In this document: positions 35,798-45,635 of the stretch, piece by piece
How the letters are laid out: each line of letters begins with the position of its first letter
Numbering within the stretch: the stretch's first letter is position 1
The notes under the pieces: generated by a model
What the model was told of the DNA's origin: nothing
Databases searched by the model: none
Seen by the model: only the letters and a program-made list of their open reading frames with translations
Made by a program: the position numbers and the translations under genes
Assembly: GCA_943704425.1 (NCBI GenBank)
Contig: CALSCP010001419.1
Coordinates: 1-64,000 of the forward strand
DNA: 64,000 nucleotides
Reading direction: 5' to 3'
From: Ministeria vibrans ATCC 50519
Taxonomy: Eukaryota > Protista > Filasterea

Positions 35798-38700
35798 TCA
35801 GTATCTCTCAATCACAACAAGCGATGAGTCGACACACGCAAACTCACTCTCGCGCTCGAGCGCAGTGGTACACACGCGCACCATGCCCAAGGTAGTCTGC
35901 AACAGGAGATAGGGCACGCCCTGCAAAGCACACAAGTGAACGTGCGCGACGTCCCGAAGCACAGAGGGTGTGTCGAGGGTGGAAGCAGAGCGTACACCTT
36001 CAGGCACTGCAAGCGTCACCGTTTGGCGCTCTTCACGTTCTGCATTGACAAACAGCAGCTCGTACACGTGATCGGCGGTTGTCAAGGAGGAGGAGGGTGG
36101 CAACGACGACAACGACGTCGTGGTGCTCTTGGCGGACCAGGCAGTGAGATCAGTATAGCCCGATGGGAGCGAGTTGTACGCCGTCTCGGGCGGACCGACC
36201 GATGTAAGCACTGCGCCGTTCTTGGACCAGCTGAGGGTGAAAACGACAAGGTCCCCGTCGATTCCGTTGTAGCCAAGCACGTGAAGGTGAGAGGGAGCCG
36301 TGACTGACGAGAGTCGGGCACTGCCAGTCGACGCCACACGCACGCACCGACATTCAAGAGTAGCACGGTCGTCTGACGGCAGACCGTCGCCCGTAAAGTG
36401 GGCCAAGTCCAGCGCGTGCATCTCGCCTGTGGCACTGTTGTAGAGCAGTGCGCAGTCGCGTGGAGGCCAGGCATTGTGGCCAGTCGGATGCGACACGGTG
36501 ATCAAGTGAGTCGCACCGCGCGGACACTCGACCGGCGCCCCAAGCGACGTGGCACAAACAACGTTGCGTAGAGAACAAATGGACTCGGCGAGGACAAGCT
36601 GCACTGAGCCAGTGGTGCGCTCGTACGCAAGGAATCCATCGCGGACAGGCGTAAACAGCCACAGCAGTGCTGATGGACTGTTGCCCGGACGATTTCTACC
36701 CAGACCCGTCTGTAGCGACTGACCGCGATCGGGCGCTCGTCTGGGCCGTACAACTTTTAGAAGACACGCGAGTGACGCGTCCGCCGACAGCGCGACCACA
36801 AGCGACGAGCGTACCCCGGAGAGTAAAGGACGGCCGCGCGTGCCACGGACCGGAAGCGCATCAGCGACGTCGACATAACGCACAAGTTGTGGGGCGTCCA
36901 AGTCAAGCTCAGTCATCAGCGTCTGAGTCAGCGTGCGCAGCTCGTTGCCCACACGAAGAAGCTCCTCGCGTTGCTCAAGTGTTGTTGGTGGTGCATGCTG
37001 GTAGGCAAGACGCACGTGAAGTGAATTCGCTGGCGGCAACACAGCGTGTGCTCGACCGCAAGCGGCGAGAGCTGCGGCAGTCCAAGCCGCGAGCGCCGAG
37101 CCCACCCGACGGGAGACACACTCGAGGGGAACGCTCTCAAGATTGTCGCTGGTGGCAGCCGTTGGCTGCGAAGCTTTGACCCGAAACGACGTCCAACTGG
37201 CACTCTGACACTGCAGTGCACAGCGCGAGACGAGACTCGAGCACAGCTGCGTCCACGTTGCCATGCCGGTCATGGCCGCCGGAATGCCATCAAAGAGCCG
37301 CAGCAAATCCACGTGGAACGACGATGGAGGTGGCAGCCAAAACAGCAAGCCTACGCGGCTCTCGCGTATCACATTTTGCATCTGACACAGGACTGAAACA
37401 AAAATAACGTCAAAATAATAACGAACGATGATCAAAAAATGAATTGAAATTATTATCGATTGATTACCGTCAAAGACACGAGACGCAGGTGAAATAGTAC
37501 AGGTGAAGCTAACGCCCTCGTAGCGAGCAACAGCTCCGCGAGCATTAAAGCGCGAGGAAGGGAAGGGAGCATGAGGCCAGCGGAGGCCAGCGGCAAGGGT
37601 GTCGGCGGCAAGGTGTGACAGAAGCACTTTTTCGGTGGCCAGCAAAGCCGAGAGTTTAGTAGTGCAATTGGAAGATAGATTGTCGTCGTCGTCGTCGTCG
37701 TCAAGCTGACGATGTTGTACACTCTCAAACTGCAGTGTGTAGCCGGCGGTGCTGCCAAGTGTGGCAAGGCACGCCTGGCGCACGCGTTCGAGCATGTGGT
37801 CAGGAGCGACGACTAGAAGATTATTCACAGGTGTGCCACGCAGAAGAAGACGCACTGCCATGAGAGTTTGCAGGAGGGTACGAGACGGGGCCGGTAACAG
37901 GCACATGGTGTGATCAATGCCGTGGCTATGGACAATTTGTTGCAGACTTGCTTGCTCCAGTGCGTCCGTCAGCACCAACACGGACGCAGCGCCGTTGAGA
38001 GTTGCACCCGCATCGCCACACGACCGCACATAGCCACACGCATGTTCCACAAGTCTATTCCACTCAGCTCGACGTGTGTCCGACGATGATGAAGAAGACG
38101 ACGACGGCAATGATACTACTGGCGGACCAATGACAACCGTTGCAAGAGGATTGCGCAAAAGCATTTCGCCATTGGCAATTTGTGGGATGCCTAAAAGGCG
38201 ACGCAAAAATCCACTGTGACTAATCACAATCACAAGCGCTGCACCACTCAAGTGACCGTCGCCTGAGCTGTCAAGCCACTAAAAAGAATAGAATATAATT
38301 TAAAGTGAGTCGCAATGACGATGTCATCCATTGTACAAAAGGGGATAAAAGAGAGAATAATGCGTCGACGTACTCTTCTGAAACATCGAGCGCGCTCAGC
38401 AATGTTTGCCTCTGACTCACGTTCGACGCGGGATATGGTCCCATTGGCAAGGGCGCCTTTTGGACGGAAAGGACAGCCGTCGACGCACCAGGCGTCGTCG
38501 GCGACGAGAGGCTCCTCGTCGGCACTCATGTCAACAAAGGCATCGTTCAAGAACCAGTGGTTGGCGACAAGCGAGAAGGACACGCGAGGGAATTCGGCTT
38601 GCAGGAGGGACGCACGTCGGCCGACGTCGCAGTCGGCATGGACCACTTCGGCCAGCAGGGGCTGCGCTACGATGCGAATCCCGCGCGGCAGTGCCATCGC

Positions 38701-38992
38701 CGTTGCAAGACAGCGCGTCAGAGGCGACGTGACCGCTACGCGAAACGCTGTCAGCAACAGAAACAGGCAGTCAACGCATGCATATACCTACGACCCGGTC
38801 CAGGCCGGTCGCGAGGAATCCGGCGCTGTCGAGGAAGCGTTGAAAGTCTTGTGACAAGTTGGCGAGCTGTGAATGGCCCTGCGTCGAAAGTGGTGCGTCC
38901 CGCAGCCCGTGGGTGTTGCTCCCCTTGCTTGCCGCCGCATTGTGCTCGCTTTCTACGTGTCTAACATATGCGACGACGGGCGCCTGGAGCAT
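35798..38992 (-). CDS. Multidomain fusion: histidine phosphatase (PGAM-like) + DUF218-like + DUF1868-type 2H phosphoesterase + probable beta-propeller
   Basis: YVRHVESEHN, DAPLS..G..Q, SPLTRC..TA and VISHSG (His phosphatase); SRTLLQT..LLVVAPDHMLER (DUF218-like); RFNARG..YEGVSF, LPPPSSFHV and LHVRLAY (2H); beta-rich C-terminus. Three short introns. Confidence 0.65.
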
Positions 38993-39214
38993 CAGACACT
39001 GATTTATATTTTTGATCTTTTATCAACTTGATTAGAAAAGGATTGTTTTATAGTTTATATACACCTGTAAAATAATATGACTAATGTAAACCGAGACTAC
39101 TCTAGAGTTCTATATTGTCCCATTCCCACTTCCAAGCAAATGGTGGTACATTTAGTATTATTGTGGTCACTATAATAATAAAAATATAATAATAATTGTG
39201 TTTGTTTTGTTTGT

Positions 39215-42200
39215 TTATGTGCTCCCTCCTCGCATACGCAGCACAAGCATGACACACCGACTTTTGGCATCGGTACTCCCTTCAACAATACCGTAGACGT
39301 CCAAGGCGACATTCTCCACAAGATGCTTTCCGTTGAAGACTAGACGCTGATCTTTGCAGGGGATGCCTTCCCGGTCAGAGATGAGACTCTGGAGGTGCGC
39401 CACCGTCTTGCCAGGCTCGCAGACGACAGTAATCGTTTTTCCGGTTAGTGTTCGGATGGAAACAGGAAAGCCACCGCGTTGGAGGGCAGCCGCAGCCTGC
39501 CGCTGGCGCTCGGCCTCTTCGTAGGCGAGAGCATCCTCATAGAGGCTCGCCAGACGACGACGATTGGCGCCCGTGGCGGATGTCTGTGCGTAGCTGTGCG
39601 CCAACCAGTGGTCAAACCAGGCAAGGGCGGCGTCGGGCAGCTCACGACGGATGTATCGGTGACTCTGGACGACAACAGTGGCCGTGTCGTGTGGGGCAGG
39701 GCGATCGAAAATGTGCACCAGGATAGCAATGAGACAGGCTTCGCTGCGATGCTGAATGGCCATATCGATCCAACCAACGTTGAGCGACGCATACGACGTG
39801 TTAGCAACACCACGGTCGAGCAGCAGCCGCACCATGTCGGGCGCATCGTTGGCAATGGCCATGTGTATGCAGTGCAAGTAGGCCCACGAGAGTTGGCCAG
39901 GTCCGACCACCTCCTTGTGTACGCGCTCGTACTCGGCTCCGCCTGGTATCTCGCTGAGACGCTCTCGTGTGCCACTCAAACTTGGATCCGAAAGAGCAGC
40001 GTCGTCGAGCTTGAGCGACTGGGCGCCAAACGCAGTGCCACACGAGGCGACGCGATTGTCACGACAGCCTGCATTGATGAGCAGCCGCACTGCCTCTATG
40101 TTGCCCACTTGCGTCGCCAGGAACAGCTCAGTGCGTTGCGTCGCGCTCCCCTCGGCAAAGGTAGTGAGCGACGCATTGGCAGCCGAGGCGGCCTCAACGA
40201 GCGCACGCACCATGGCAGTCGTGCCACGCAGACACGCCAGGTGGGTGAGCCCAAATGCTTCGGGGCGTGAGTCAGCCCAGACGGTCGAGACGGTGACGCC
40301 GTAGCGGGGACGATACGGTGGCTGCGTCTTGCCAAAAAGCTCCTCGGGTGGTGTAGCTCGCACAAGGGCCACAAAGGTCTCTTCGTTGATGGGCGTGTCG
40401 GGTGAAAGCATGTCAAAAAGACGCACAACCGAGTCGGGCACCTCACTGGCGGTAGCGCCCTGAGGCGCGTCAACAAGAGTCGTACTGAATGCTTTGGAGA
40501 GGTGGCGCACGGCGACAGCCAGACATTCAATGCCAACGCCAAGACTGCCACGCTCGAGGACCGTCGGAAGCGCATCCAGAGCAAACTTTCCTAAGGCCTC
40601 GTTAAGACGCTGGAGGTCGGCTGACGCCGCCGGATTGTGCGCGACCGAGTCGTGGTCCTGGACGCCGAGTGAGGCCAAATAGGTGCTCATGCGGATGGTG
40701 TCGCTGACGGAGAGATCGCGCGATTTTTCGCGTAGAATGGTGCGCAGTGCAGCTACAAAGGTCGCCTGGAACTGCTCGGGATGGTCGGTGGACGCGCGAA
40801 GGTGGCGACTTGTGTTCTCGTGCATCCACACGTCGCCATTGAGAGAGCGCTGGACAAAGGCGCAGCGGGCGGCGAGGGTGCAGCACGAATCGACGGATGT
40901 GGTCGACGTCCAGCCAAGGTGCACAAGCACGGCCGTGTAGATGTCGCAGGGAATGCGGCACTGTGCCGGAAAGCACGCGAGTACTTGAAGAAACTTGACG
41001 GTGCGGGTGCGCGAGTGCTGCGACAGCTCCTCGAGTGCTTTTGAGAGCAGGTAGGTGTCGTTGTCTCGGCCATCTTCTCCGTGTGCCTCCTCATCCTCTT
41101 CCGTCGTGGCAAATCCCACGAGCGCTTCGAGAGGGTTGGTCGCGTGAGCACATGTGGCGGCGACCACGGAGAGAAGAAGTAGGTTGTGCTGGGTTCGAGT
41201 GGACACTTGTAGTGCAACGGAAGGGGACAGGTCGCAGGGGCAAGCGGCGCTCAGGAAGGCGGGCGCGAAGGCAGGGTCGACTGTGGCAAAGTCTACAAGG
41301 ATGGGAGTGGGGCGGATGTCGCAAAGGTGGGCAAGGGAGCGCGTCGTGATTAAGAGAACAAGATTTGAGGGCAAGGCAAGGAAGGGAGCAAGCTGGGCGG
41401 CCGAGGAGACGTTGTCAAGGACGACGAGGCGACACAATGACGACAAGGACGAGGTGGAGGTGGAAGAATTAGAAGAAGAAGAGGATGAGGGGCAAGCATA
41501 GCTGGCAAGCGCCTTCTGTAGCGCCTCGGGGGTGGTGAGGTCGGCGACCGATCGGACATCACGGCCCGTGAGAGTGGCAAGTAACTGTTGTGCTTGGGCG
41601 ATTCCGGTTGTATCGCTCAGAGCAAACTCAAGCCACACTGGTGTGTGTGTATTCTCATGATGGTTTGCGTCGATGGAAGATGAGAATCGTTCCAGAAGCC
41701 GTGCAGTGGGTAGATCCGATGTCGAGAGGTCGGAGGCAAAGCGCTCACTGTGCGGTGCAGTGCGGGCGACGAGGCGGGCCAGCAGCGCTGCGGCAGTGCT
41801 CTTGCCCGATCCTCCAGGACCTACAAGGGCGATACAAGAGGCAGTGCTCACGACAAGCGCATTTGCAGCCGCCACGAGCGGACGGTGTTGAAGTAGTAGT
41901 ACAGTAGGAAGGGTCTTGGCGGAGCGTTGAAAGAGCCAATTGGCGCGCGCGCGACCATGTTGCGCCGACTCGTTGATCGATGATAGCTCCAAAATTTCCG
42001 TCCGTAGCAGATCAATGTCGTCTTGGCTTTGAGCTGTCGCTGTGCGACCGTCGCCTTGCGCCATACTGCGAATCCAATCGACAACGAAAACACCACAATC
42101 GTTGCCGGTGGTCTGACGGAGGGAGACAGGCGCCGCGACCAACGGGACGTCACGGCCACTGTACCAGTTGGCGGGCGGTGTGCCCTCGACCGACTCGATG

Positions 42201-43060
42201 ACTGCCGCAAGACCCACAAGAAGCTGTTGAGCCACTTGATGGCATCGGGGTGCACTGGGTGGAGGCAGCGAGTCGAAGAGGACGGCACGCCAGCACTTTG
42301 AGTCGGCAGTGTCGCGACTGACACGCAGCAGCGTCCAATGTTGATTGTCAATGTTGAGAGGAAGCAGCACACTTGTGGTGACGCCGCGCTTGAAGAAGTC
42401 GCGAGTGGCATTCACCTGTGCAGCAAGAGTCAGACCGGGCGCCATGGCTGGGTTGGTGGCGAGCACAGCGACCGTGGCAGGCTCCACAATTGCACAATTT
42501 CGACCTCGCGTTGAAGATGGCACGAAATGCTGCAGGGCCAACACAATCATGTCGTCGGTAAGCCAGACGCTATTGTTCTGACTCGAGGGGGGCTGTGGTG
42601 GGGCATATTCAAGGCTATGGAGACGAGCGGCGCGCGTGGCCATGGCGTCGACACACGATGCCAAGTTCACGTCGCGACTGAGCTGCACAGCACAGCTCAT
42701 GAGGTGTTCGTAGGCGGGATCACAACCAAGAGTATCACGCGAGCAATTGAAGAGAAACAGCAGCGGCAGCGCTTGCGAGCGAGCCAGTCGTGCGGCAAAA
42801 TCCCGTTGGGTCGACGGGTCGGATACAATGAGAATGGCGAGACGAGTCGAGTCGATGATAGATTCGGGTGCCTCTGCCTTGTTTTCAGCAAACGCATTGA
42901 GGTACACACTGAGGCCATGCTGTTCGGTGAGACTTGTGTAGAGGAGCTGGGCAAGGAGTGGGTGGGCGTGGAAGATGGCGCAGTCGTAACGCTTGCGATA
43001 CAGCCGCCCTGAAACAGCCTCAGACGAGGACGATTGCACCGCCGACGTGGGAGTTGACAT
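39215..43060 (-). CDS. NLR/STAND-like protein: TIR-like + Ulp1/C48 protease + NB-ARC-like NTPase + ankyrin repeats + C-terminal ubiquitin domain
   Basis: Intronless, 1281 aa. YDCAIFH...GLSVYL...IIDSTRLAILIVS (TIR-like); WLTDDMI, PLNIDNQHWTLL, FDSL, QTTGNDCGVFV (C48); GPGGSGKST, LVVLDNV, LLITTR (STAND); THLACLRG, LFLATQVGNIEAVRLLINAG, IHMAIANDAPDMVRLLLDRG (ankyrin); TLTGKTI...EGIP..QRLVFNGK...LVLRMRGG (ubiquitin). Confidence 0.88.
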   Translation of the reverse strand: MSTPTSAVQSSSSEAVSGRLYRKRYDCAIFHAHPLLAQLLYTSLTEQHGLSVYLNAFAENKAEAPESIIDSTRLAILIVSDPSTQRDFAARLARSQALPLLFLFNCSRDTLGCDPAYEHLMSCAVQLSRDVNLASCVDAMATRAARLHSLEYAPPQPPSSQNNSVWLTDDMIVLALQHFVPSSTRGRNCAIVEPATVAVLATNPAMAPGLTLAAQVNATRDFFKRGVTTSVLLPLNIDNQHWTLLRVSRDTADSKCWRAVLFDSLPPPSAPRCHQVAQQLLVGLAAVIESVEGTPPANWYSGRDVPLVAAPVSLRQTTGNDCGVFVVDWIRSMAQGDGRTATAQSQDDIDLLRTEILELSSINESAQHGRARANWLFQRSAKTLPTVLLLQHRPLVAAANALVVSTASCIALVGPGGSGKSTAAALLARLVARTAPHSERFASDLSTSDLPTARLLERFSSSIDANHHENTHTPVWLEFALSDTTGIAQAQQLLATLTGRDVRSVADLTTPEALQKALASYACPSSSSSSNSSTSTSSLSSLCRLVVLDNVSSAAQLAPFLALPSNLVLLITTRSLAHLCDIRPTPILVDFATVDPAFAPAFLSAACPCDLSPSVALQVSTRTQHNLLLLSVVAATCAHATNPLEALVGFATTEEDEEAHGEDGRDNDTYLLSKALEELSQHSRTRTVKFLQVLACFPAQCRIPCDIYTAVLVHLGWTSTTSVDSCCTLAARCAFVQRSLNGDVWMHENTSRHLRASTDHPEQFQATFVAALRTILREKSRDLSVSDTIRMSTYLASLGVQDHDSVAHNPAASADLQRLNEALGKFALDALPTVLERGSLGVGIECLAVAVRHLSKAFSTTLVDAPQGATASEVPDSVVRLFDMLSPDTPINEETFVALVRATPPEELFGKTQPPYRPRYGVTVSTVWADSRPEAFGLTHLACLRGTTAMVRALVEAASAANASLTTFAEGSATQRTELFLATQVGNIEAVRLLINAGCRDNRVASCGTAFGAQSLKLDDAALSDPSLSGTRERLSEIPGGAEYERVHKEVVGPGQLSWAYLHCIHMAIANDAPDMVRLLLDRGVANTSYASLNVGWIDMAIQHRSEACLIAILVHIFDRPAPHDTATVVVQSHRYIRRELPDAALAWFDHWLAHSYAQTSATGANRRRLASLYEDALAYEEAERQRQAAAALQRGGFPVSIRTLTGKTITVVCEPGKTVAHLQSLISDREGIPCKDQRLVFNGKHLVENVALDVYGIVEGSTDAKSRCVMLVLRMRGGST

Positions 43061-43153
43061 GAGAAAGTAGTAAGAGGGAAAGTGAACAGAAAATATTAAT
43101 AATTATTATTCTTTTTTTTACTTTACAATCTTAATGACGTTGTTAAAAATTAT

Positions 43154-44321
43154 TCACATTTTTCCGTCGGTCGGACCGACCACGAGCGGGCCGTCGTCGT
43201 CGTCACCTTCACCCTCCTCGAAAAACGCCCATTCGCATGTGTCGCACAAATGCGTGCGTAGCCCATGAGCTCGCCACACTAGCTCGCGTGACTCCCTATC
43301 GTTTCGGAGATCGTCGACCGACGAGAAGAAACGCTAATAAGGTGGAAAATCAATATTATCTCTTTCAACAATAATGATACAAATTTTTTTTAAAAAAAAA
43401 AATAAGTTAATATGTATAGGTACCTGAAGGGCCTGCACCAAAAAGTTATTGCCGGGCTCGACAAGATCGACAAAAAAGTCGGCGGGCACTTCGCGAATCT
43501 GATGGGAGAGCACATCGACAAAGTCGACAAAGAGATCGCGATGGAGTTGAAGCGCACGCTCACTGAAGCAGAGAAGACGCACCAGACGCTTCCATTGTTC
43601 AAACGCCGTCAGAGAATGTCCGAGCAAGAAGCACAGATAGGCGTATTCGAGTTCGCCAAGAATCTCCATGGCATCTACACATCCAAAACCACATTATTAG
43701 TGCTCTTCGCACAACTTTTCTTTTTAAGCGTGTGCCTGTCATTGATTGGAGCATGATGCCGAGCGAATACGAGTGATCTAGGCTGTGCCGGGTGATTTCG
43801 GCGGGAGTGGCACCCGGCGGGTAGCATGGCGATGGAAACGGCGTGAAGCGCAGAGCTTGGTCGTCGCTCGGATTGATCTTGCCGTCGGTAGGCTCAAGCC
43901 GACGCCACAGCGACTCAGTAATGTGGCCTGAAAGCGAAACCCAGCGCGCGAGCTCCCCGCCGTGTGGGTAGGGGCCCAGGAAGGGATCAAGGCCGCGGTG
44001 GTCGTCGCGACAGCGTTGGATTTCGTCGACGTCTTGTGAACGTTCCACATCCTCAGTCTGCGCGTCCCAGCGTAGCACCACCGTCTCGGCGGGCGACATC
44101 CACAGGAACATTCCGGTGCGGGGTCCCTGGCCGCGTCCCTCCTTGCCAACGGGCGCCCAGTGCACAAAATGCAAATGTTTCGGAAGAAACTTGACACCTC
44201 GAAAGCGCTCGCCGACCGTCCACGAGTTCATGTCGACGCCAACCTGGGTGCCTGGTGGCACATTGAGCACAACAATGCGGCCGCCAATCTCGAACCATCG
44301 TTGCGCCTCCTCCTGGTTCAT
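43154..44321 (-). CDS. AAR2: U5 snRNP assembly factor AAR2
   Basis: NVPPGTQVGVDMNSWTVGERFRGVKFLP..HFVH, LDPFLGPYP, EITRHSLDHSY, ILGELEYAYLCFLLGHS..AFEQWK. Confidence 0.93.
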
Positions 44322-44396
44322 CTCATAAAATGTCTGATCACCGATCACTGATGAGTGAAACGTTATAATTTGCGTTATTCAATCATTCTACTCAAC

Positions 44397-45604
44397 ATGT
44401 TCCGCAAGCCGTTTCGTGTCAAGTCGGACAACCTTGTCAAATCGTCGGATATTCGTCGATTACGAGCGGACATGCAACGAGCCTTTCCAGCGCTGAGCGA
44501 CGCAGACGTCGACCACATCGTCCCTGCCAAAGCGCCGCTTCACCTGCAACGCCTGCAGTTGCACGGTGGCGCCGTGTGCAACGTCTACTTCATCGATGGT
44601 GTTCCCGTTCTTTTTGAAGGCGCAGACAAGTCTAAGCGGCTCTATCCGTCCGGTAAGGCCACCGTTTCATCTCGACCGCTCGTTTCGTCTCACACCGCCA
44701 CACATTCGCCAGTCTACACACAATGGCGTGTGCCACACATTGTACCTGCCTGGACCACATCTGAAAATGCCCTTGCGCACATCGGACAGGGAGCAGGTGC
44801 GTGGAATGGTCCACCGTACGAGTGTGTTTGGCTGACTTGTCCGTTTGTTTCAGATCTTTTCTTGCCTGGCGTGCAACAGCAGTCGAACCTGGGCGAGTTT
44901 GGCGTGGGAGAAGTACGTGCCGTGTGTGTTGCAGGTAGCGGCGCTGCGTCGGCCGTCGGCGTGACAGCTGTGACAAGTGACGACGTTTCCGCCATGGGAG
45001 ATAACGTACAAGGAAAAGGCGTACACATCCTGCACACGGTCGGCGACGAGCTGTGGAGTGCCGGTCCTAAAACAAAGCTGCCCGCAATTGCATCTGCTTC
45101 ACCAACTAGAAATGACAGCAGTGTAGAAGGGTGCGGTGACGATGCCATCAAAGCGGGAGTCGCATCGACAAGCGAGCGGCAGCAGGAAGCGCAGAACGAC
45201 GAGGCAAATGAAGCGGAGGGGGAAGAAGGAGAGGAGGATGATTTTGACATGGACTCGTATGCGGAACAGTGTCTCTTTCAAGCGCTGCGCACGACGGTGA
45301 AAGACCGTGAGCTGCCAATGCTGGTGAGCACGTTGTTTGCCGAGCATGTTTTGAAGAGCCGCAGGGAAGGCGCGCCGGTGCTGGCCATCAAGCGTACGCG
45401 CTTCAAGAAGGTCTCAAGGTTCCTGGAGGCCATGGAAGAGGAAGGTATTGTAACACTCAAGGTGGAGCCCAATGGTGTGGCGTTTCTGGAGACGGTGGAA
45501 AGGGCGCATCCGCGACTGCGTTCGGCAGTGCTCACCAAGGACACGGTGGCACTGGCCGAGGCAGAGGAGCGACAGCGCACGCTCAACAGAGGTAATATTA
45601 ATTT

Positions 45605-45635
<31 letters not shown>

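What the first reader, a model, noticed from the sequence alone, without database searches (positions are those of the whole stretch)
39215..43060. NLR/STAND-like receptor carrying both a Ulp1-type protease and its own capped ubiquitin domain
Seen: one intronless ORF with the order TIR-like (~42995-42610), C48 protease with intact His/Asp/Cys and oxyanion Gln (HWTLL, FDSL, QxxGNDCG; ~42570-41990), NB-ARC-like P-loop (Walker A near 41800-41822), ankyrin repeats (~40260-39720) and a ubiquitin domain. Known: effector-STAND-repeat is the layout of NLR-type immune receptors, and C48 proteases cut after the di-Gly of Ub/SUMO/NEDD8. Inference: a switchable immune or death receptor in which oligomerisation activates a Ubl protease and the fused ubiquitin is a substrate, a decoy for pathogen deubiquitinases, or a conjugation handle. 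I know of no described receptor with this combination.
Basis: partly seen in the sequence, partly recalled or inferred. Interest (0 to 1): 0.93.

Follow-up and report, generated by a model that had tools for sequence, protein, structure and literature searches.

The report
Protease-switch-ubiquitin fusion protein in a protist
A marine single-celled eukaryote makes one large protein that joins a ubiquitin-type protease, an Apaf-1/plant-NLR-type ATP switch, ankyrin repeats and an unprocessed ubiquitin; the layout recurs in at least three other organisms and appears undescribed.

Summary
The ORF at 39215-43060 (minus strand, 1281 aa) is real. Spliced RNA contigs cover it from 39090 to 43082 without any joint, so it is one unspliced transcript and not a chimera.

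- **Confirmed domains:**
  - A C48/Ulp1 protease with Trp166, His241, Asp263, Gln316 and Cys322 invariant.
  - A divergent NB-ARC STAND ATPase with Walker A, Walker B, TTR and an MHD-type His.
  - Four ankyrin repeats.
  - A ubiquitin domain ending RGG plus the cap Ser-Thr.
- **Not confirmed:** the N-terminal "TIR-like" module (residues 1-160). No sequence or structure test supports it.
- **Family:** the same layout occurs in the choanoflagellate Didymoeca costata and in two unnamed public assemblies. Those two carry a genuine TIR between the protease and the NB-ARC.
- **Precedent:** ULP1-NB-ARC fusions are already known (soybean Rpp1). The ankyrin and pro-ubiquitin combination was not found in the literature searched.
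- **Caveat for the immune reading:** the gene is single copy and its ankyrin part is the best conserved, which looks more like Apaf-1 than a diversifying immune NLR.
- **Best reading (inferred):** a nucleotide-gated oligomerising switch that controls a Ubl protease, whose first substrate is its own capped ubiquitin tail.

This is a new variant of a known kind.

The parts
39090..43082 (-). Transcript: unspliced, with a 5' UTR of about 22 nt and a 3' UTR of about 125 nt
   Evidence: X1 RNA contigs cover 39090-40141 and 40143-43082 with no joints. X1 splices the neighbouring genes, so it is RNA.
39215..43060 (-). Coding sequence of 1281 aa plus a TAA stop
   Evidence: GC3 is 0.57-0.69 in all segments, against 0.22-0.30 in the flanks.
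42581..43060 (-). N-terminal module, residues 1-160, fold unassigned.
   Evidence: No Pfam, HMM or PDB match. pLDDT 28-55. Weak language-model lead to TIR clusters. Absent from the Didymoeca homologue, which starts at the position of Met121.
41981..42577 (-). C48/Ulp1-type cysteine protease, residues 162-360. WLTDD (Trp166) at 42551-42565, His241-Trp242 within 42326-42346, Asp263 within 42266-42280, Gln316 to Cys322 (QTTGNDCG) at 42092-42115.
   Evidence: Pfam PF02902 at 27.5 bits. AF2 pLDDT 75-94. Foldseek matches OtDUB, NopD, XopD, Ulp1 and SENP at E of about 1e-7. H241, D263 and C322 are invariant and Q316 nearly invariant across a 10-sequence alignment; W166 is invariant in the four full-length proteins.
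40781..41878 (-). Divergent NB-ARC (NBD-ARC1-WHD), residues about 395-760. Walker A 41795-41821, Ser-rich insert 41447-41491, Walker B LVVLDN 41411-41428, TTR 41336-41350, degenerate GLPL 41162-41188, FPxxxxIP 40949-40975, VWMHE (MHD-type) 40817-40831.
   Evidence: Homologues hit Pfam NB-ARC at 1.2e-9 and 2.8e-6. The family profile hits ADR1-L2 at 4e-7 and an RPW8 domain-containing NLR (8zf0, which I take to be NRG1) at 9e-4 in the PDB. Foldseek matches Apaf-1, CED-4 and NRC2.
40271..40780 (-). Helical linker domain, residues 761-930 (HD2-like position)
   Evidence: The AF2 model is helical here. It is the least conserved part, at 29% and 18% identity.
39701..40270 (-). Four ankyrin repeats, residues 931-1120, with a conserved 60-residue insertion between repeats 2 and 3 (SSC...LKLDD at 40001-40048) and the GWIDMAI motif at 39755-39775
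   Evidence: Pfam Ank_2 4.2e-7 and Ank 3.9e-6. Helix pairs in the AF2 model. Best conserved part, at 42% and 35% identity.
39470..39700 (-). Conserved helical linker, residues 1121-1197, ending in an invariant Gly-Gly (1196-1197, nt 39470-39475) directly before ubiquitin strand 1
   Evidence: This RGG aligns with the RGG of the preceding unit of polyubiquitin.
39224..39469 (-). Ubiquitin domain, residues 1198-1279. About 47% identical to ubiquitin, with a 6-residue insertion before the last strand. Ends LRMRGG (Gly-Gly at 39224-39229).
   Evidence: Pfam ubiquitin 7.2e-12. PDB ubiquitin alignment. The equivalents of K11, R42, K48 and G75-G76 are invariant in the family.
39215..39223 (-). Two-residue cap Ser1280-Thr1281, then the TAA stop
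   Evidence: Homologues have the caps YK, SDY and VEIEKERV after the same Gly-Gly.

Best explanation
The gene encodes a single-chain, nucleotide-gated switch protein of the Apaf-1/plant-NLR (NB-ARC STAND) class.

Shown:
- The domain order is an unassigned N-terminal module, an active-looking C48 Ubl protease, NB-ARC, a helical linker, four ankyrin repeats and ubiquitin-GG-cap.
- It is expressed as one unspliced mRNA.
- This layout is conserved in four lineages.

Inferred:
- The ankyrin module holds the ADP-bound switch closed until a conserved ligand or perturbation is met.
- Nucleotide exchange then drives oligomerisation, which brings the N-terminal C48 domains together. In the relatives that have one, it also brings the TIR domain together.
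- The first substrate of the protease is the protein's own C-terminal pro-ubiquitin. The cap (Ser-Thr here) is trimmed after Gly1279, in trans within the oligomer or in cis, exactly as ULP/SENP/DEN1 enzymes mature SUMO and NEDD8 precursors.
- The exposed Gly-Gly then makes the activated receptor a substrate for the cell's E1/E2 machinery (self-conjugation, chain building on the conserved K48/K11, or timed destruction). The protease may also strip other Ub/Ubl conjugates.
- The trigger may be infection or stress.
- The single-copy, conserved-sensor pattern is closer to an Apaf-1-like death or stress switch than to a polymorphic pathogen receptor.
For: - **Gene model:**
- **C48 fold and motifs:** the catalytic set W166, H241-W242, D263, Q316, C322 is conserved.
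- **NB-ARC:** supported by the homologues' Pfam hits, a profile hit to ADR1-L2 and fold hits to Apaf-1, CED-4 and NRC. K420, D549 and H747 are invariant, and the sensor Arg573 is kept in Didymoeca but is His in P0002.
- **Protease-ubiquitin pairing:**
  - All four family members pair the C48 domain with a C-terminal ubiquitin.
  - Its Gly-Gly is invariant while the following 2-8 residues are unrelated (ST, YK, SDY, VEIEKERV). This is the signature of a Ubl precursor.
  - The TIR comes and goes between members.
- **Ubiquitin surface:** the equivalents of R42, K48 and K11 are invariant, and the residue at position 72 stays basic.
- **C48 subgroup:** in an exhaustive phmmer scan of 1.84 billion proteins, the only hits to the C48 region were small C48 proteins, four of six also carrying a TIR, plus one full-length relative. 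Canonical SENPs did not appear.
- **Genome context:** at least 29 other NB-ARC loci.
- **Polymorphism:** 4 synonymous to 2 nonsynonymous changes, which fits a constrained gene.
Against: - No biochemical evidence exists for any step.
- The protein's own NB-ARC Pfam score is below threshold (11 bits).
- The NOD-to-C-terminus model is of low confidence (mean pLDDT 55).
- The second Walker B acidic residue is Asn here and in Didymoeca, so ATP hydrolysis may be weak.
- Arg74 of ubiquitin is not conserved in the relatives (tails RVIGG, KLVGG, RLLGG), so use by the canonical ubiquitin E1 is uncertain.
- The gene is single copy, its ankyrin region is the best-conserved part, and its neighbours are housekeeping genes (AAR2, eIF2D). 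None of this indicates an immune role.
Confidence: 0.5

Rival explanations
1. The ubiquitin domain is never cleaved or conjugated. It acts as a non-covalent Ubl module in one of two ways. It could be an intramolecular pseudo-substrate that sits in the S1 site of the C48 domain and keeps the resting protein closed. Or it could be a docking handle for proteasome or UBD proteins, as in Parkin, OASL or USP-type UBL domains. The protease then acts only on other cellular Ub/Ubl conjugates once the switch opens.
For: - Protease and ubiquitin lie at opposite ends of a STAND protein, where N- and C-terminal parts commonly contact each other in the resting state (general knowledge of Apaf-1 and NLR structures).
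- The position equivalent to ubiquitin Arg74 varies among members.
- There is a 6-residue insertion in the ubiquitin of this protein.
Against: An uncleaved Ubl has no need to keep an invariant Gly-Gly followed by a short unrelated cap across proteins that are only 25-35% identical. The equivalents of K48, K11 and R42 are also invariant.
Confidence: 0.2
2. Tripwire or integrated decoy. The ubiquitin-GG-cap, and the RGG-ubiquitin junction that mimics a polyubiquitin joint, are baits for deubiquitinases or Ubl proteases of viruses or bacteria. Cleavage by the invader releases autoinhibition and fires the switch, as viral proteases fire NLRP1 and CARD8 (own knowledge).
For: - The RGG at 1195-1197 aligns with the end of the preceding unit in polyubiquitin and is conserved in all four members.
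- NLR integrated decoys are an established principle.
- The marine protist setting brings heavy exposure to viruses.
Against: - Deubiquitinases need a folded ubiquitin on the N-terminal side of the scissile bond. Upstream of Gly1197 the model shows a helix, not a Ubl.
- Removing two residues from the C-terminus is a small change to sense.
- The constant presence of the protein's own active-looking C48 domain is left unexplained.
- The gene is single copy and conserved, and not diversifying.
Confidence: 0.12
3. A housekeeping regulator of Ub/Ubl homeostasis with no role in conflict or death. On this view it is a SENP/DEN1-like processing enzyme that has acquired an ATP-dependent scaffold and carries one copy of its substrate.
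For: - Single copy, conserved sensor, housekeeping neighbours and steady expression in four RNA samples.
Against: - Very patchy distribution. Only four lineages were found among 1.84 and 5.8 billion proteins, and none in JGI metagenomes or viral contigs.
- The protein is fused to a TIR that retains the conserved Glu in two members.
- Its C48 relatives are mostly TIR-linked, and the genome has separate canonical C48 loci.
Confidence: 0.1
4. The ORF is an assembly or annotation chimera of separate genes.
For: None was found. The X1 contigs break at 40141/40143, but the two pieces abut and the break lies next to a T/A variant at 40097.
Against: - A DNA contig from X10, apparently genomic since it shows no spliced joints, spans 39142-43570.
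- RNA contigs abut without a joint.
- The same colinear layout is present in a Didymoeca transcript and in two other assemblies.
Confidence: 0.02

Closest known systems
Soybean Rpp1 and other plant ULP1-NBS-LRR / Peptidase_C48 NLR-ID proteins
   Same: A Ulp1/C48 domain lies N-terminal to an NB-ARC switch with a C-terminal repeat sensor (PMC9528084; PMC4759884; PMC11297723).
   Different: - The plant proteins use LRR, not ankyrin, and have no ubiquitin domain.
- They are members of expanded, polymorphic resistance clusters.
- No sequence link to them was found, so the fusion is probably independent. The C48 here groups with small C48 proteins, most of which also carry a TIR.
Apaf-1 / CED-4 / Dark (AP-ATPase apoptosome proteins)
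   Same: - NB-ARC with a WHD and an MHD-type His.
- Best structural matches to the model.
- Single-copy, conserved protein whose oligomer activates a cysteine protease.
   Different: - In Apaf-1 the protease (a caspase) is a separate protein recruited through CARD, whereas here a clan CE protease is fused in cis.
- The sensor is ankyrin, not WD40.
- Apaf-1 has no Ubl.
Plant TNLs and fungal NB-ARC-ankyrin NLRs
   Same: - The relatives P0002 and L009 have TIR directly before NB-ARC, as in TNLs.
- NB-ARC followed by ankyrin repeats is a common fungal NLR layout (PMC4986451, PMC9815663).
   Different: - The 19 Pfam N-terminal effector domains listed in the fungal survey read here include no C48, and the text does not mention C48 or Ulp1.
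- No C-terminal ubiquitin follows the repeats in those proteins.
- This protein itself lacks a verifiable TIR.
Ubl precursors and their maturases (pro-SUMO with Ulp1/SENP, pro-NEDD8 with DEN1/NEDP1, polyubiquitin with DUBs)
   Same: - Gly-Gly followed by a short, variable C-terminal extension.
- C48 enzymes remove exactly such extensions (established knowledge; the structural hits include SENP2-preSUMO complexes).
   Different: Here enzyme and precursor are the two ends of one 1281-aa polypeptide, separated by a STAND switch. Maturation would leave the Ubl attached to the receptor.
Bacterial CBASS Cap2/Cap3 priming and Bil systems (own knowledge); Ubl-coupled STAND and ternary conflict systems (PMC7159879)
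   Same: An immune sensor or effector carries a C-terminal Gly or a Ubl that is unmasked by a dedicated peptidase and ligated to targets.
   Different: - The bacterial systems are multi-gene operons.
- They use JAB peptidases and their own E1/E2.
- No homology to this protein was shown.

Membership tests
Peptidase C48 (Ulp1/SENP, clan CE) | Profile match above the curated cut-off | tested here: met
   PF02902 at 27.5 bits against a cut-off of 20.7, residues 231-354. Homologues score 48 and 32.8 bits.
Peptidase C48 (Ulp1/SENP, clan CE) | Catalytic His-Asp-Cys, oxyanion Gln and tunnel Trp (WLxD motif) | tested here: met
   W166, H241, D263, Q316 and C322 are invariant in the four full-length proteins. 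H241, D263 and C322 stay invariant and Q316 nearly invariant across 10 sequences. Positions.
Peptidase C48 (Ulp1/SENP, clan CE) | Clan CE fold | tested here: met
   AF2 pLDDT 75-94 over residues 162-360. Foldseek probability 1.00 to OtDUB, NopD, XopD, Ulp1, SENP1/2/5/7 and NEDP1.
Peptidase C48 (Ulp1/SENP, clan CE) | Hydrolysis after the Gly-Gly of a Ubl | not testable with these tools
   Needs an enzyme assay.
NB-ARC / AP-ATPase STAND NTPases | Profile match of this protein above the curated cut-off | tested here: not met
   PF00931 scores 11.3 bits at E 0.21, covering the Walker A only. The genome-wide PF00931 scan does not pick up this locus.
NB-ARC / AP-ATPase STAND NTPases | Profile match of colinear homologues and of the family profile | tested here: met
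   P0001 scores 38.3 bits (1.2e-9) and P0002 27.2 bits. Family profile A4 hits ADR1-L2 (9jbn) at 4.1e-7 from Walker B through GLPL to the WHD, and an RPW8 domain-containing NLR (8zf0) at 8.9e-4.
NB-ARC / AP-ATPase STAND NTPases | Walker A Lys, Walker B Asp, sensor-1 Arg (TTR) and MHD His | tested here: met
   K420, D549, R573 and H747 are present. K420, D549 and H747 are invariant. The second Walker B acidic residue is Asn550, and the GLPL motif is degenerate (NLLLLSV).
NB-ARC / AP-ATPase STAND NTPases | NBD-ARC1-WHD fold | tested here: inconclusive
   The top Foldseek hits are all Apaf-1, CED-4, a STAND-TPR protein and NRC (E 1e-6 to 1e-4). However, the model has mean pLDDT 55 and the TM-scores are about 0.2.
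NLR-type immune receptor (functional class) | Tripartite layout of effector, NOD and repeats | tested here: met
   C48, then NB-ARC, then ankyrin.
NLR-type immune receptor (functional class) | Lineage-specific expansion and a diversifying sensor | tested here: not met
   No paralogue in the 29.7 Mb genome. The ankyrin region is the most conserved part, at 42% and 35% identity.
NLR-type immune receptor (functional class) | Role in defence or cell death | not testable with these tools
   Needs genetics and challenge experiments.
TIR domain (for residues 1-160) | Profile or HMM match | tested here: not met
   No Pfam hit at E up to 1. An HMM and hhalign built from the family's own TIRs give a score of -1.4 and a probability of 0.1%. 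PDB phmmer finds no TIR.
TIR domain (for residues 1-160) | Flavodoxin-like TIR fold | tested here: inconclusive
   The AF2 model shows strand-helix alternation at residues 26-94 but with pLDDT 28-55. Language-model neighbours include TIR clusters at 0.86-0.88, below the lead threshold.
TIR domain (for residues 1-160) | Catalytic Glu of the WxLxEL motif | tested here: not met
   The relatives' TIRs keep it (WPLWEL and similar). No equivalent Glu follows the ILIVSD strand in this protein.
Ubiquitin family | Profile match and beta-grasp sequence | tested here: met
   PF00240 at 45.3 bits, E 7.2e-12. About 47% identity to ubiquitin over 74 aligned positions.
Ubiquitin family | C-terminal Gly-Gly available for conjugation | tested here: inconclusive
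   Gly-Gly is present and invariant but masked by Ser-Thr. Unmasking and conjugation are untested.
Ankyrin repeats | Profile match | tested here: met
   Ank_2 at 30.9 bits against a cut-off of 27.3, and Ank at 27.3 bits against 21.1.

The most novel reading that the evidence does not exclude
A self-unmasking, self-conjugating receptor. On activation, the STAND oligomer uses its own C48 protease to expose the Gly-Gly of its own ubiquitin tail. The whole activated complex is then ligated by the host E1/E2/E3 machinery onto targets or into K48/K11-linked chains. This would couple sensing to covalent tagging, or to a built-in destruction timer. It would be a eukaryotic, single-polypeptide counterpart of CBASS Cap2/Cap3 priming, present in close unicellular relatives of animals.
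Probability: 0.15. Interest if true: 0.9.

Novelty: new variant of a known kind. Interest (0 to 1): 0.68.

Why it matters
STAND/NLR switches normally release a death-fold adaptor, a TIR NADase, a pore former or a caspase. Here the constant partners of the switch are a Ubl protease and an unprocessed ubiquitin, placed at the two ends of the same chain and conserved together across distant lineages.

- If the protease matures its own tail, this would be a direct link between NLR-type activation and ubiquitin-type conjugation in one molecule.
- One homologue comes from a choanoflagellate, so the family bears on which cell-death or immune switches existed before animals.
- The idea is directly testable with a handful of point mutants: Cys322Ala, Lys420Ala and Gly1278-Gly1279 to Ala-Ala.

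Tried and rejected
**Searches for relatives**
- Three word-indexed homologue searches, with the window protein, P0002 and P0001. Only Didymoeca P0001 turned up; the other two found only themselves.
- An exhaustive phmmer scan of residues 1-930 against 1.84 billion representatives. It gave 8 hits: one full-length relative and small C48 or C48+TIR proteins.
- JGI metagenome and IMG/VR scans with NOD-ankyrin patterns found nothing.

**TIR tests for residues 1-160**
- Pfam, an HMM and hhalign built from the family TIRs, PDB phmmer, BLASTP against the TIR-C48 protein P0004, and AF2 were all negative or uninformative.

**Other attempts**
- PADLOC gave only P-loop noise for this protein.
- The profile search of the PDB with the NOD-to-ubiquitin alignment was swamped by ubiquitin. 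It was repeated with the NOD alone.
- The idea of a two-gene module with the downstream phosphoesterase-like gene gained no support. The transcripts are separate (38939 against 39090) and the relatives give no neighbourhood information.
- The organism could not be named. "Holozoan or choanoflagellate-related" is inference from the Didymoeca hit only.
- Accession-number searches in papers found nothing.
- The gene pieces of L009 were used separately by reference and never joined.

Full report
**1. Gene model**

- The window carries one open frame of 1281 codons at 39215-43060 on the minus strand.
- Laying public runs on 37800-43700 showed that run X1 is RNA. Its contigs skip three short CT..AC intervals (minus-strand GT..AG introns at 38279-38373, 38736-38787 and 43334-43423) in the two neighbouring genes.
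- The same run covers 39090-40141 and 40143-43082 with no joint. The two pieces abut beside a T/A variant.
- A contig from X10, apparently genomic DNA since it shows no spliced joints, spans 39142-43570.
- A run of 21 T before 43094 marks the poly(A) site of the upstream minus-strand gene. The transcript of interest therefore starts within about 12 nt of it.
- The 22 nt before the ATG at 43060 hold no other ATG.
- GC3 is 0.57-0.69 in every segment of the ORF, including the first 160 codons, against 0.22-0.30 in the flanks.
- Six variants among runs split 4 synonymous to 2 nonsynonymous.
- The ORF is a genuine, unspliced, expressed gene and not a chimera. Pieces at 99% identity or more also occur in a marine poly(A) metatranscriptome (X7).

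**2. Domains that hold**

- *C48 protease.*
  - Pfam PF02902 is above its cut-off.
  - An AF2 model of residues 1-400 has pLDDT 75-94 over 162-360.
  - Foldseek returns only clan CE Ubl proteases: OtDUB, NopD, XopD, Ulp1, SENP1/2/5/7 and NEDP1.
  - His241, Asp263 and Cys322 are invariant and Gln316 nearly invariant in a 10-sequence alignment, and the WLxD tunnel Trp166 is invariant among the four full-length proteins.
- *Ankyrin and ubiquitin.* Both are above their Pfam cut-offs.
- *Ubiquitin domain.*
  - It is about 47% identical to ubiquitin, with a 6-residue insertion.
  - It ends LRMRGG, followed by Ser-Thr and the stop.
- *NB-ARC.* This protein alone scores only on its P-loop, at 11 bits. 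The assignment rests on three other lines:
  - Colinear homologues hit PF00931 at 1.2e-9 and 2.8e-6.
  - A profile of the NOD region alone has the plant helper NLR ADR1-L2 as its best PDB match, at 4e-7. The alignment runs from Walker B through the GLPL region to the winged helix.
  - A low-confidence model (pLDDT 55) still retrieves Apaf-1, CED-4, a STAND-TPR protein and NRC2 as top Foldseek hits.
- *NB-ARC motifs.*
  - Walker A GPGGSGKST at residues 414-422.
  - Walker B LVVLDN at 545-550, with Asn in place of the second acidic residue.
  - TTR at 572-574.
  - A degenerate GLPL motif.
  - An invariant WMH at 745-747 in the place of the MHD motif.

**3. The domain that does not hold**

The proposed TIR-like module (residues about 22-150) failed every test:
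- There is no Pfam match.
- It does not match an HMM or hhalign profile built from the TIRs of this protein's own relatives.
- No TIR appears in a PDB sequence search.
- It shows no similarity to the TIR of P0004, which has the same TIR-then-C48 order.
- AF2 pLDDT is 28-55.

What remains is a strand-helix alternation in a poor model and language-model neighbours at 0.86-0.88. By the tool's own statistics that is only a lead. The module also lacks the Glu of the WxLxEL motif and is absent from the closest homologue. I leave it unassigned.

**4. The family**

| Member | Source | Layout | Ubiquitin tail |
|---|---|---|---|
| P0001 / P0010 | Didymoeca costata (choanoflagellate), transcript-derived | C48, NB-ARC, ankyrin, ubiquitin; 30% identical over 90% of the query | VIGG-YK |
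| P0002 | unnamed assembly, 4.3 kb contig L004 | C48, TIR (TIR_2 1.2e-18), NB-ARC, ankyrin, ubiquitin | LVGG-SDY |
| L009 | unnamed genomic contig; gene in four frame pieces separated by gaps of about 60 nt or more | as P0002, to which it is 37% identical | LLGG-VEIEKERV |

- The constant parts are therefore C48, NB-ARC, ankyrin and ubiquitin-GG-cap. The TIR is optional and sits between the protease and the NB-ARC when present.
- A second Gly-Gly, directly before ubiquitin strand 1, is also invariant (RGG-F, RGG-Y, SGG-W, NGG-F).
- Against polyubiquitin, this second Gly-Gly aligns with the RGG of the preceding unit. The module looks captured from an internal polyubiquitin repeat.
- The other hits of the exhaustive search were small C48 proteins, four of six with a TIR on one side or the other, and not canonical SENPs.
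- Nothing was found in JGI metagenomes or IMG/VR.

**5. Context**

- The upstream genes are AAR2 and an eIF2D-like gene. The downstream gene is a separately transcribed, spliced gene. There is no sign of an island or an operon-like module.
- The genome (29.7 Mb) has no paralogue of this protein.
- It has at least 29 other NB-ARC loci in long open frames and three other C48 loci.
- Per-domain identity to the homologues is highest in the ankyrin region (42% and 35%) and lowest in the helical linker. This is the opposite of a diversifying NLR sensor.

**6. Mechanism**

- *Shown:* the architecture, its expression and its conservation.
- *Inferred from the established behaviour of NB-ARC proteins:* an ADP-locked monomer opens on ligand binding and oligomerises.
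- *Inferred from the established behaviour of C48 enzymes:* they bind a folded Ubl and cut after its Gly-Gly, including short precursor extensions. The clustered protease domains therefore most likely trim the cap of the receptor's own ubiquitin.
- The co-conservation of an intact catalytic set with an invariant Gly-Gly under an unrelated cap is the main argument.
- The invariance of the equivalents of R42, K48 and K11 suggests that the unmasked tail meets the ubiquitin machinery.
- Whether the trigger is infection is open. The single-copy, conserved-sensor pattern resembles Apaf-1 more than polymorphic NLRs.
- Rivals are a non-cleaved autoinhibitory or docking Ubl, a tripwire for invader DUBs, and a housekeeping maturase.

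**7. Comparison with what is known**

- A Ulp1 protease before an NB-ARC is described. Soybean Rpp1 is a ULP1-NBS-LRR, and Peptidase_C48 is among plant NLR integrated domains.
- In the fungal NLR survey read here, the 19 Pfam N-terminal effector domains listed include no C48, and C48 or Ulp1 is not mentioned in the text.
- Surveys of prokaryotic and metazoan STAND and death-domain systems mention Ubl or Ub fusions, but not this layout.
- No paper found combines C48, NB-ARC, ankyrin and a C-terminal pro-ubiquitin. The library is limited, so this is absence of evidence.

**8. Verdict**

- This is a real and conserved but rare family: a new variant of the effector-STAND-repeat kind.
- Its distinguishing feature is a protease and precursor pair flanking the switch.

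Noticed in passing
G000:C986, L010:4415-9283 (minus): A 1623-aa open frame with PARP_reg, PARP, VIT and VWA domains (vault-PARP/PARP4-like) carries an embedded ubiquitin domain at residues 1430-1500 (Pfam 2.9e-17). It was found because its ubiquitin is 44% identical to that of the finding.
   Followed up: partly
whole genome G000: At least 29 loci match Pfam NB-ARC above the cut-off, in uninterrupted open frames of 738-2201 aa. That is a large STAND repertoire for a 29.7 Mb genome. Earlier notes of the scan call several of them caspase-NB-ARC-TPR; I did not check this.
   Followed up: partly
window 43082-43094: The poly(A) site of the upstream AAR2 gene (a run of 21 T before 43094) lies only about 12 nt from the first transcribed base seen for the finding (43082). 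Gene spacing here is extremely tight.
   Followed up: no
window 43157-44348 (minus) and 44355-45608 (plus): The neighbours are housekeeping genes: AAR2, split by a 90-nt intron at 43334-43423, and an eIF2D-like protein (Pre-PUA and WH_eIF2D domains).
   Followed up: partly
window 40001-40048 (residues 1005-1020): A 60-residue insertion between ankyrin repeats 2 and 3 contains a motif conserved in all family members (SSC, then YGA, then LKLDD). Its function is unknown.
   Followed up: no
P0004, P0006, P0008, P0009: Small proteins or gene fragments from unrelated assemblies pair this C48 subtype with a TIR domain in either order. All keep the conserved Glu of the TIR WxLxEL motif. This looks like a recurrent C48-TIR association.
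   Followed up: partly
P0010 against P0001: The second Didymoeca isoform has a 22-residue Tyr/Ile-rich in-frame insertion in the NOD region, probably a retained AT-rich intron.
   Followed up: no
window 42635 (table 7): One X1 contig matches a short stretch starting at 42635 and then runs on for more than 255 unlike letters. This is probably a short repeat or a chimeric contig. It is not seen as a joint.
   Followed up: no
window 35798-38992 (minus): The downstream gene has two introns confirmed by RNA (38279-38373 and 38736-38787). It gives only faint Pfam hits (DUF1265 and a weak His_Phos_1). It is transcribed separately from the finding.
   Followed up: partly
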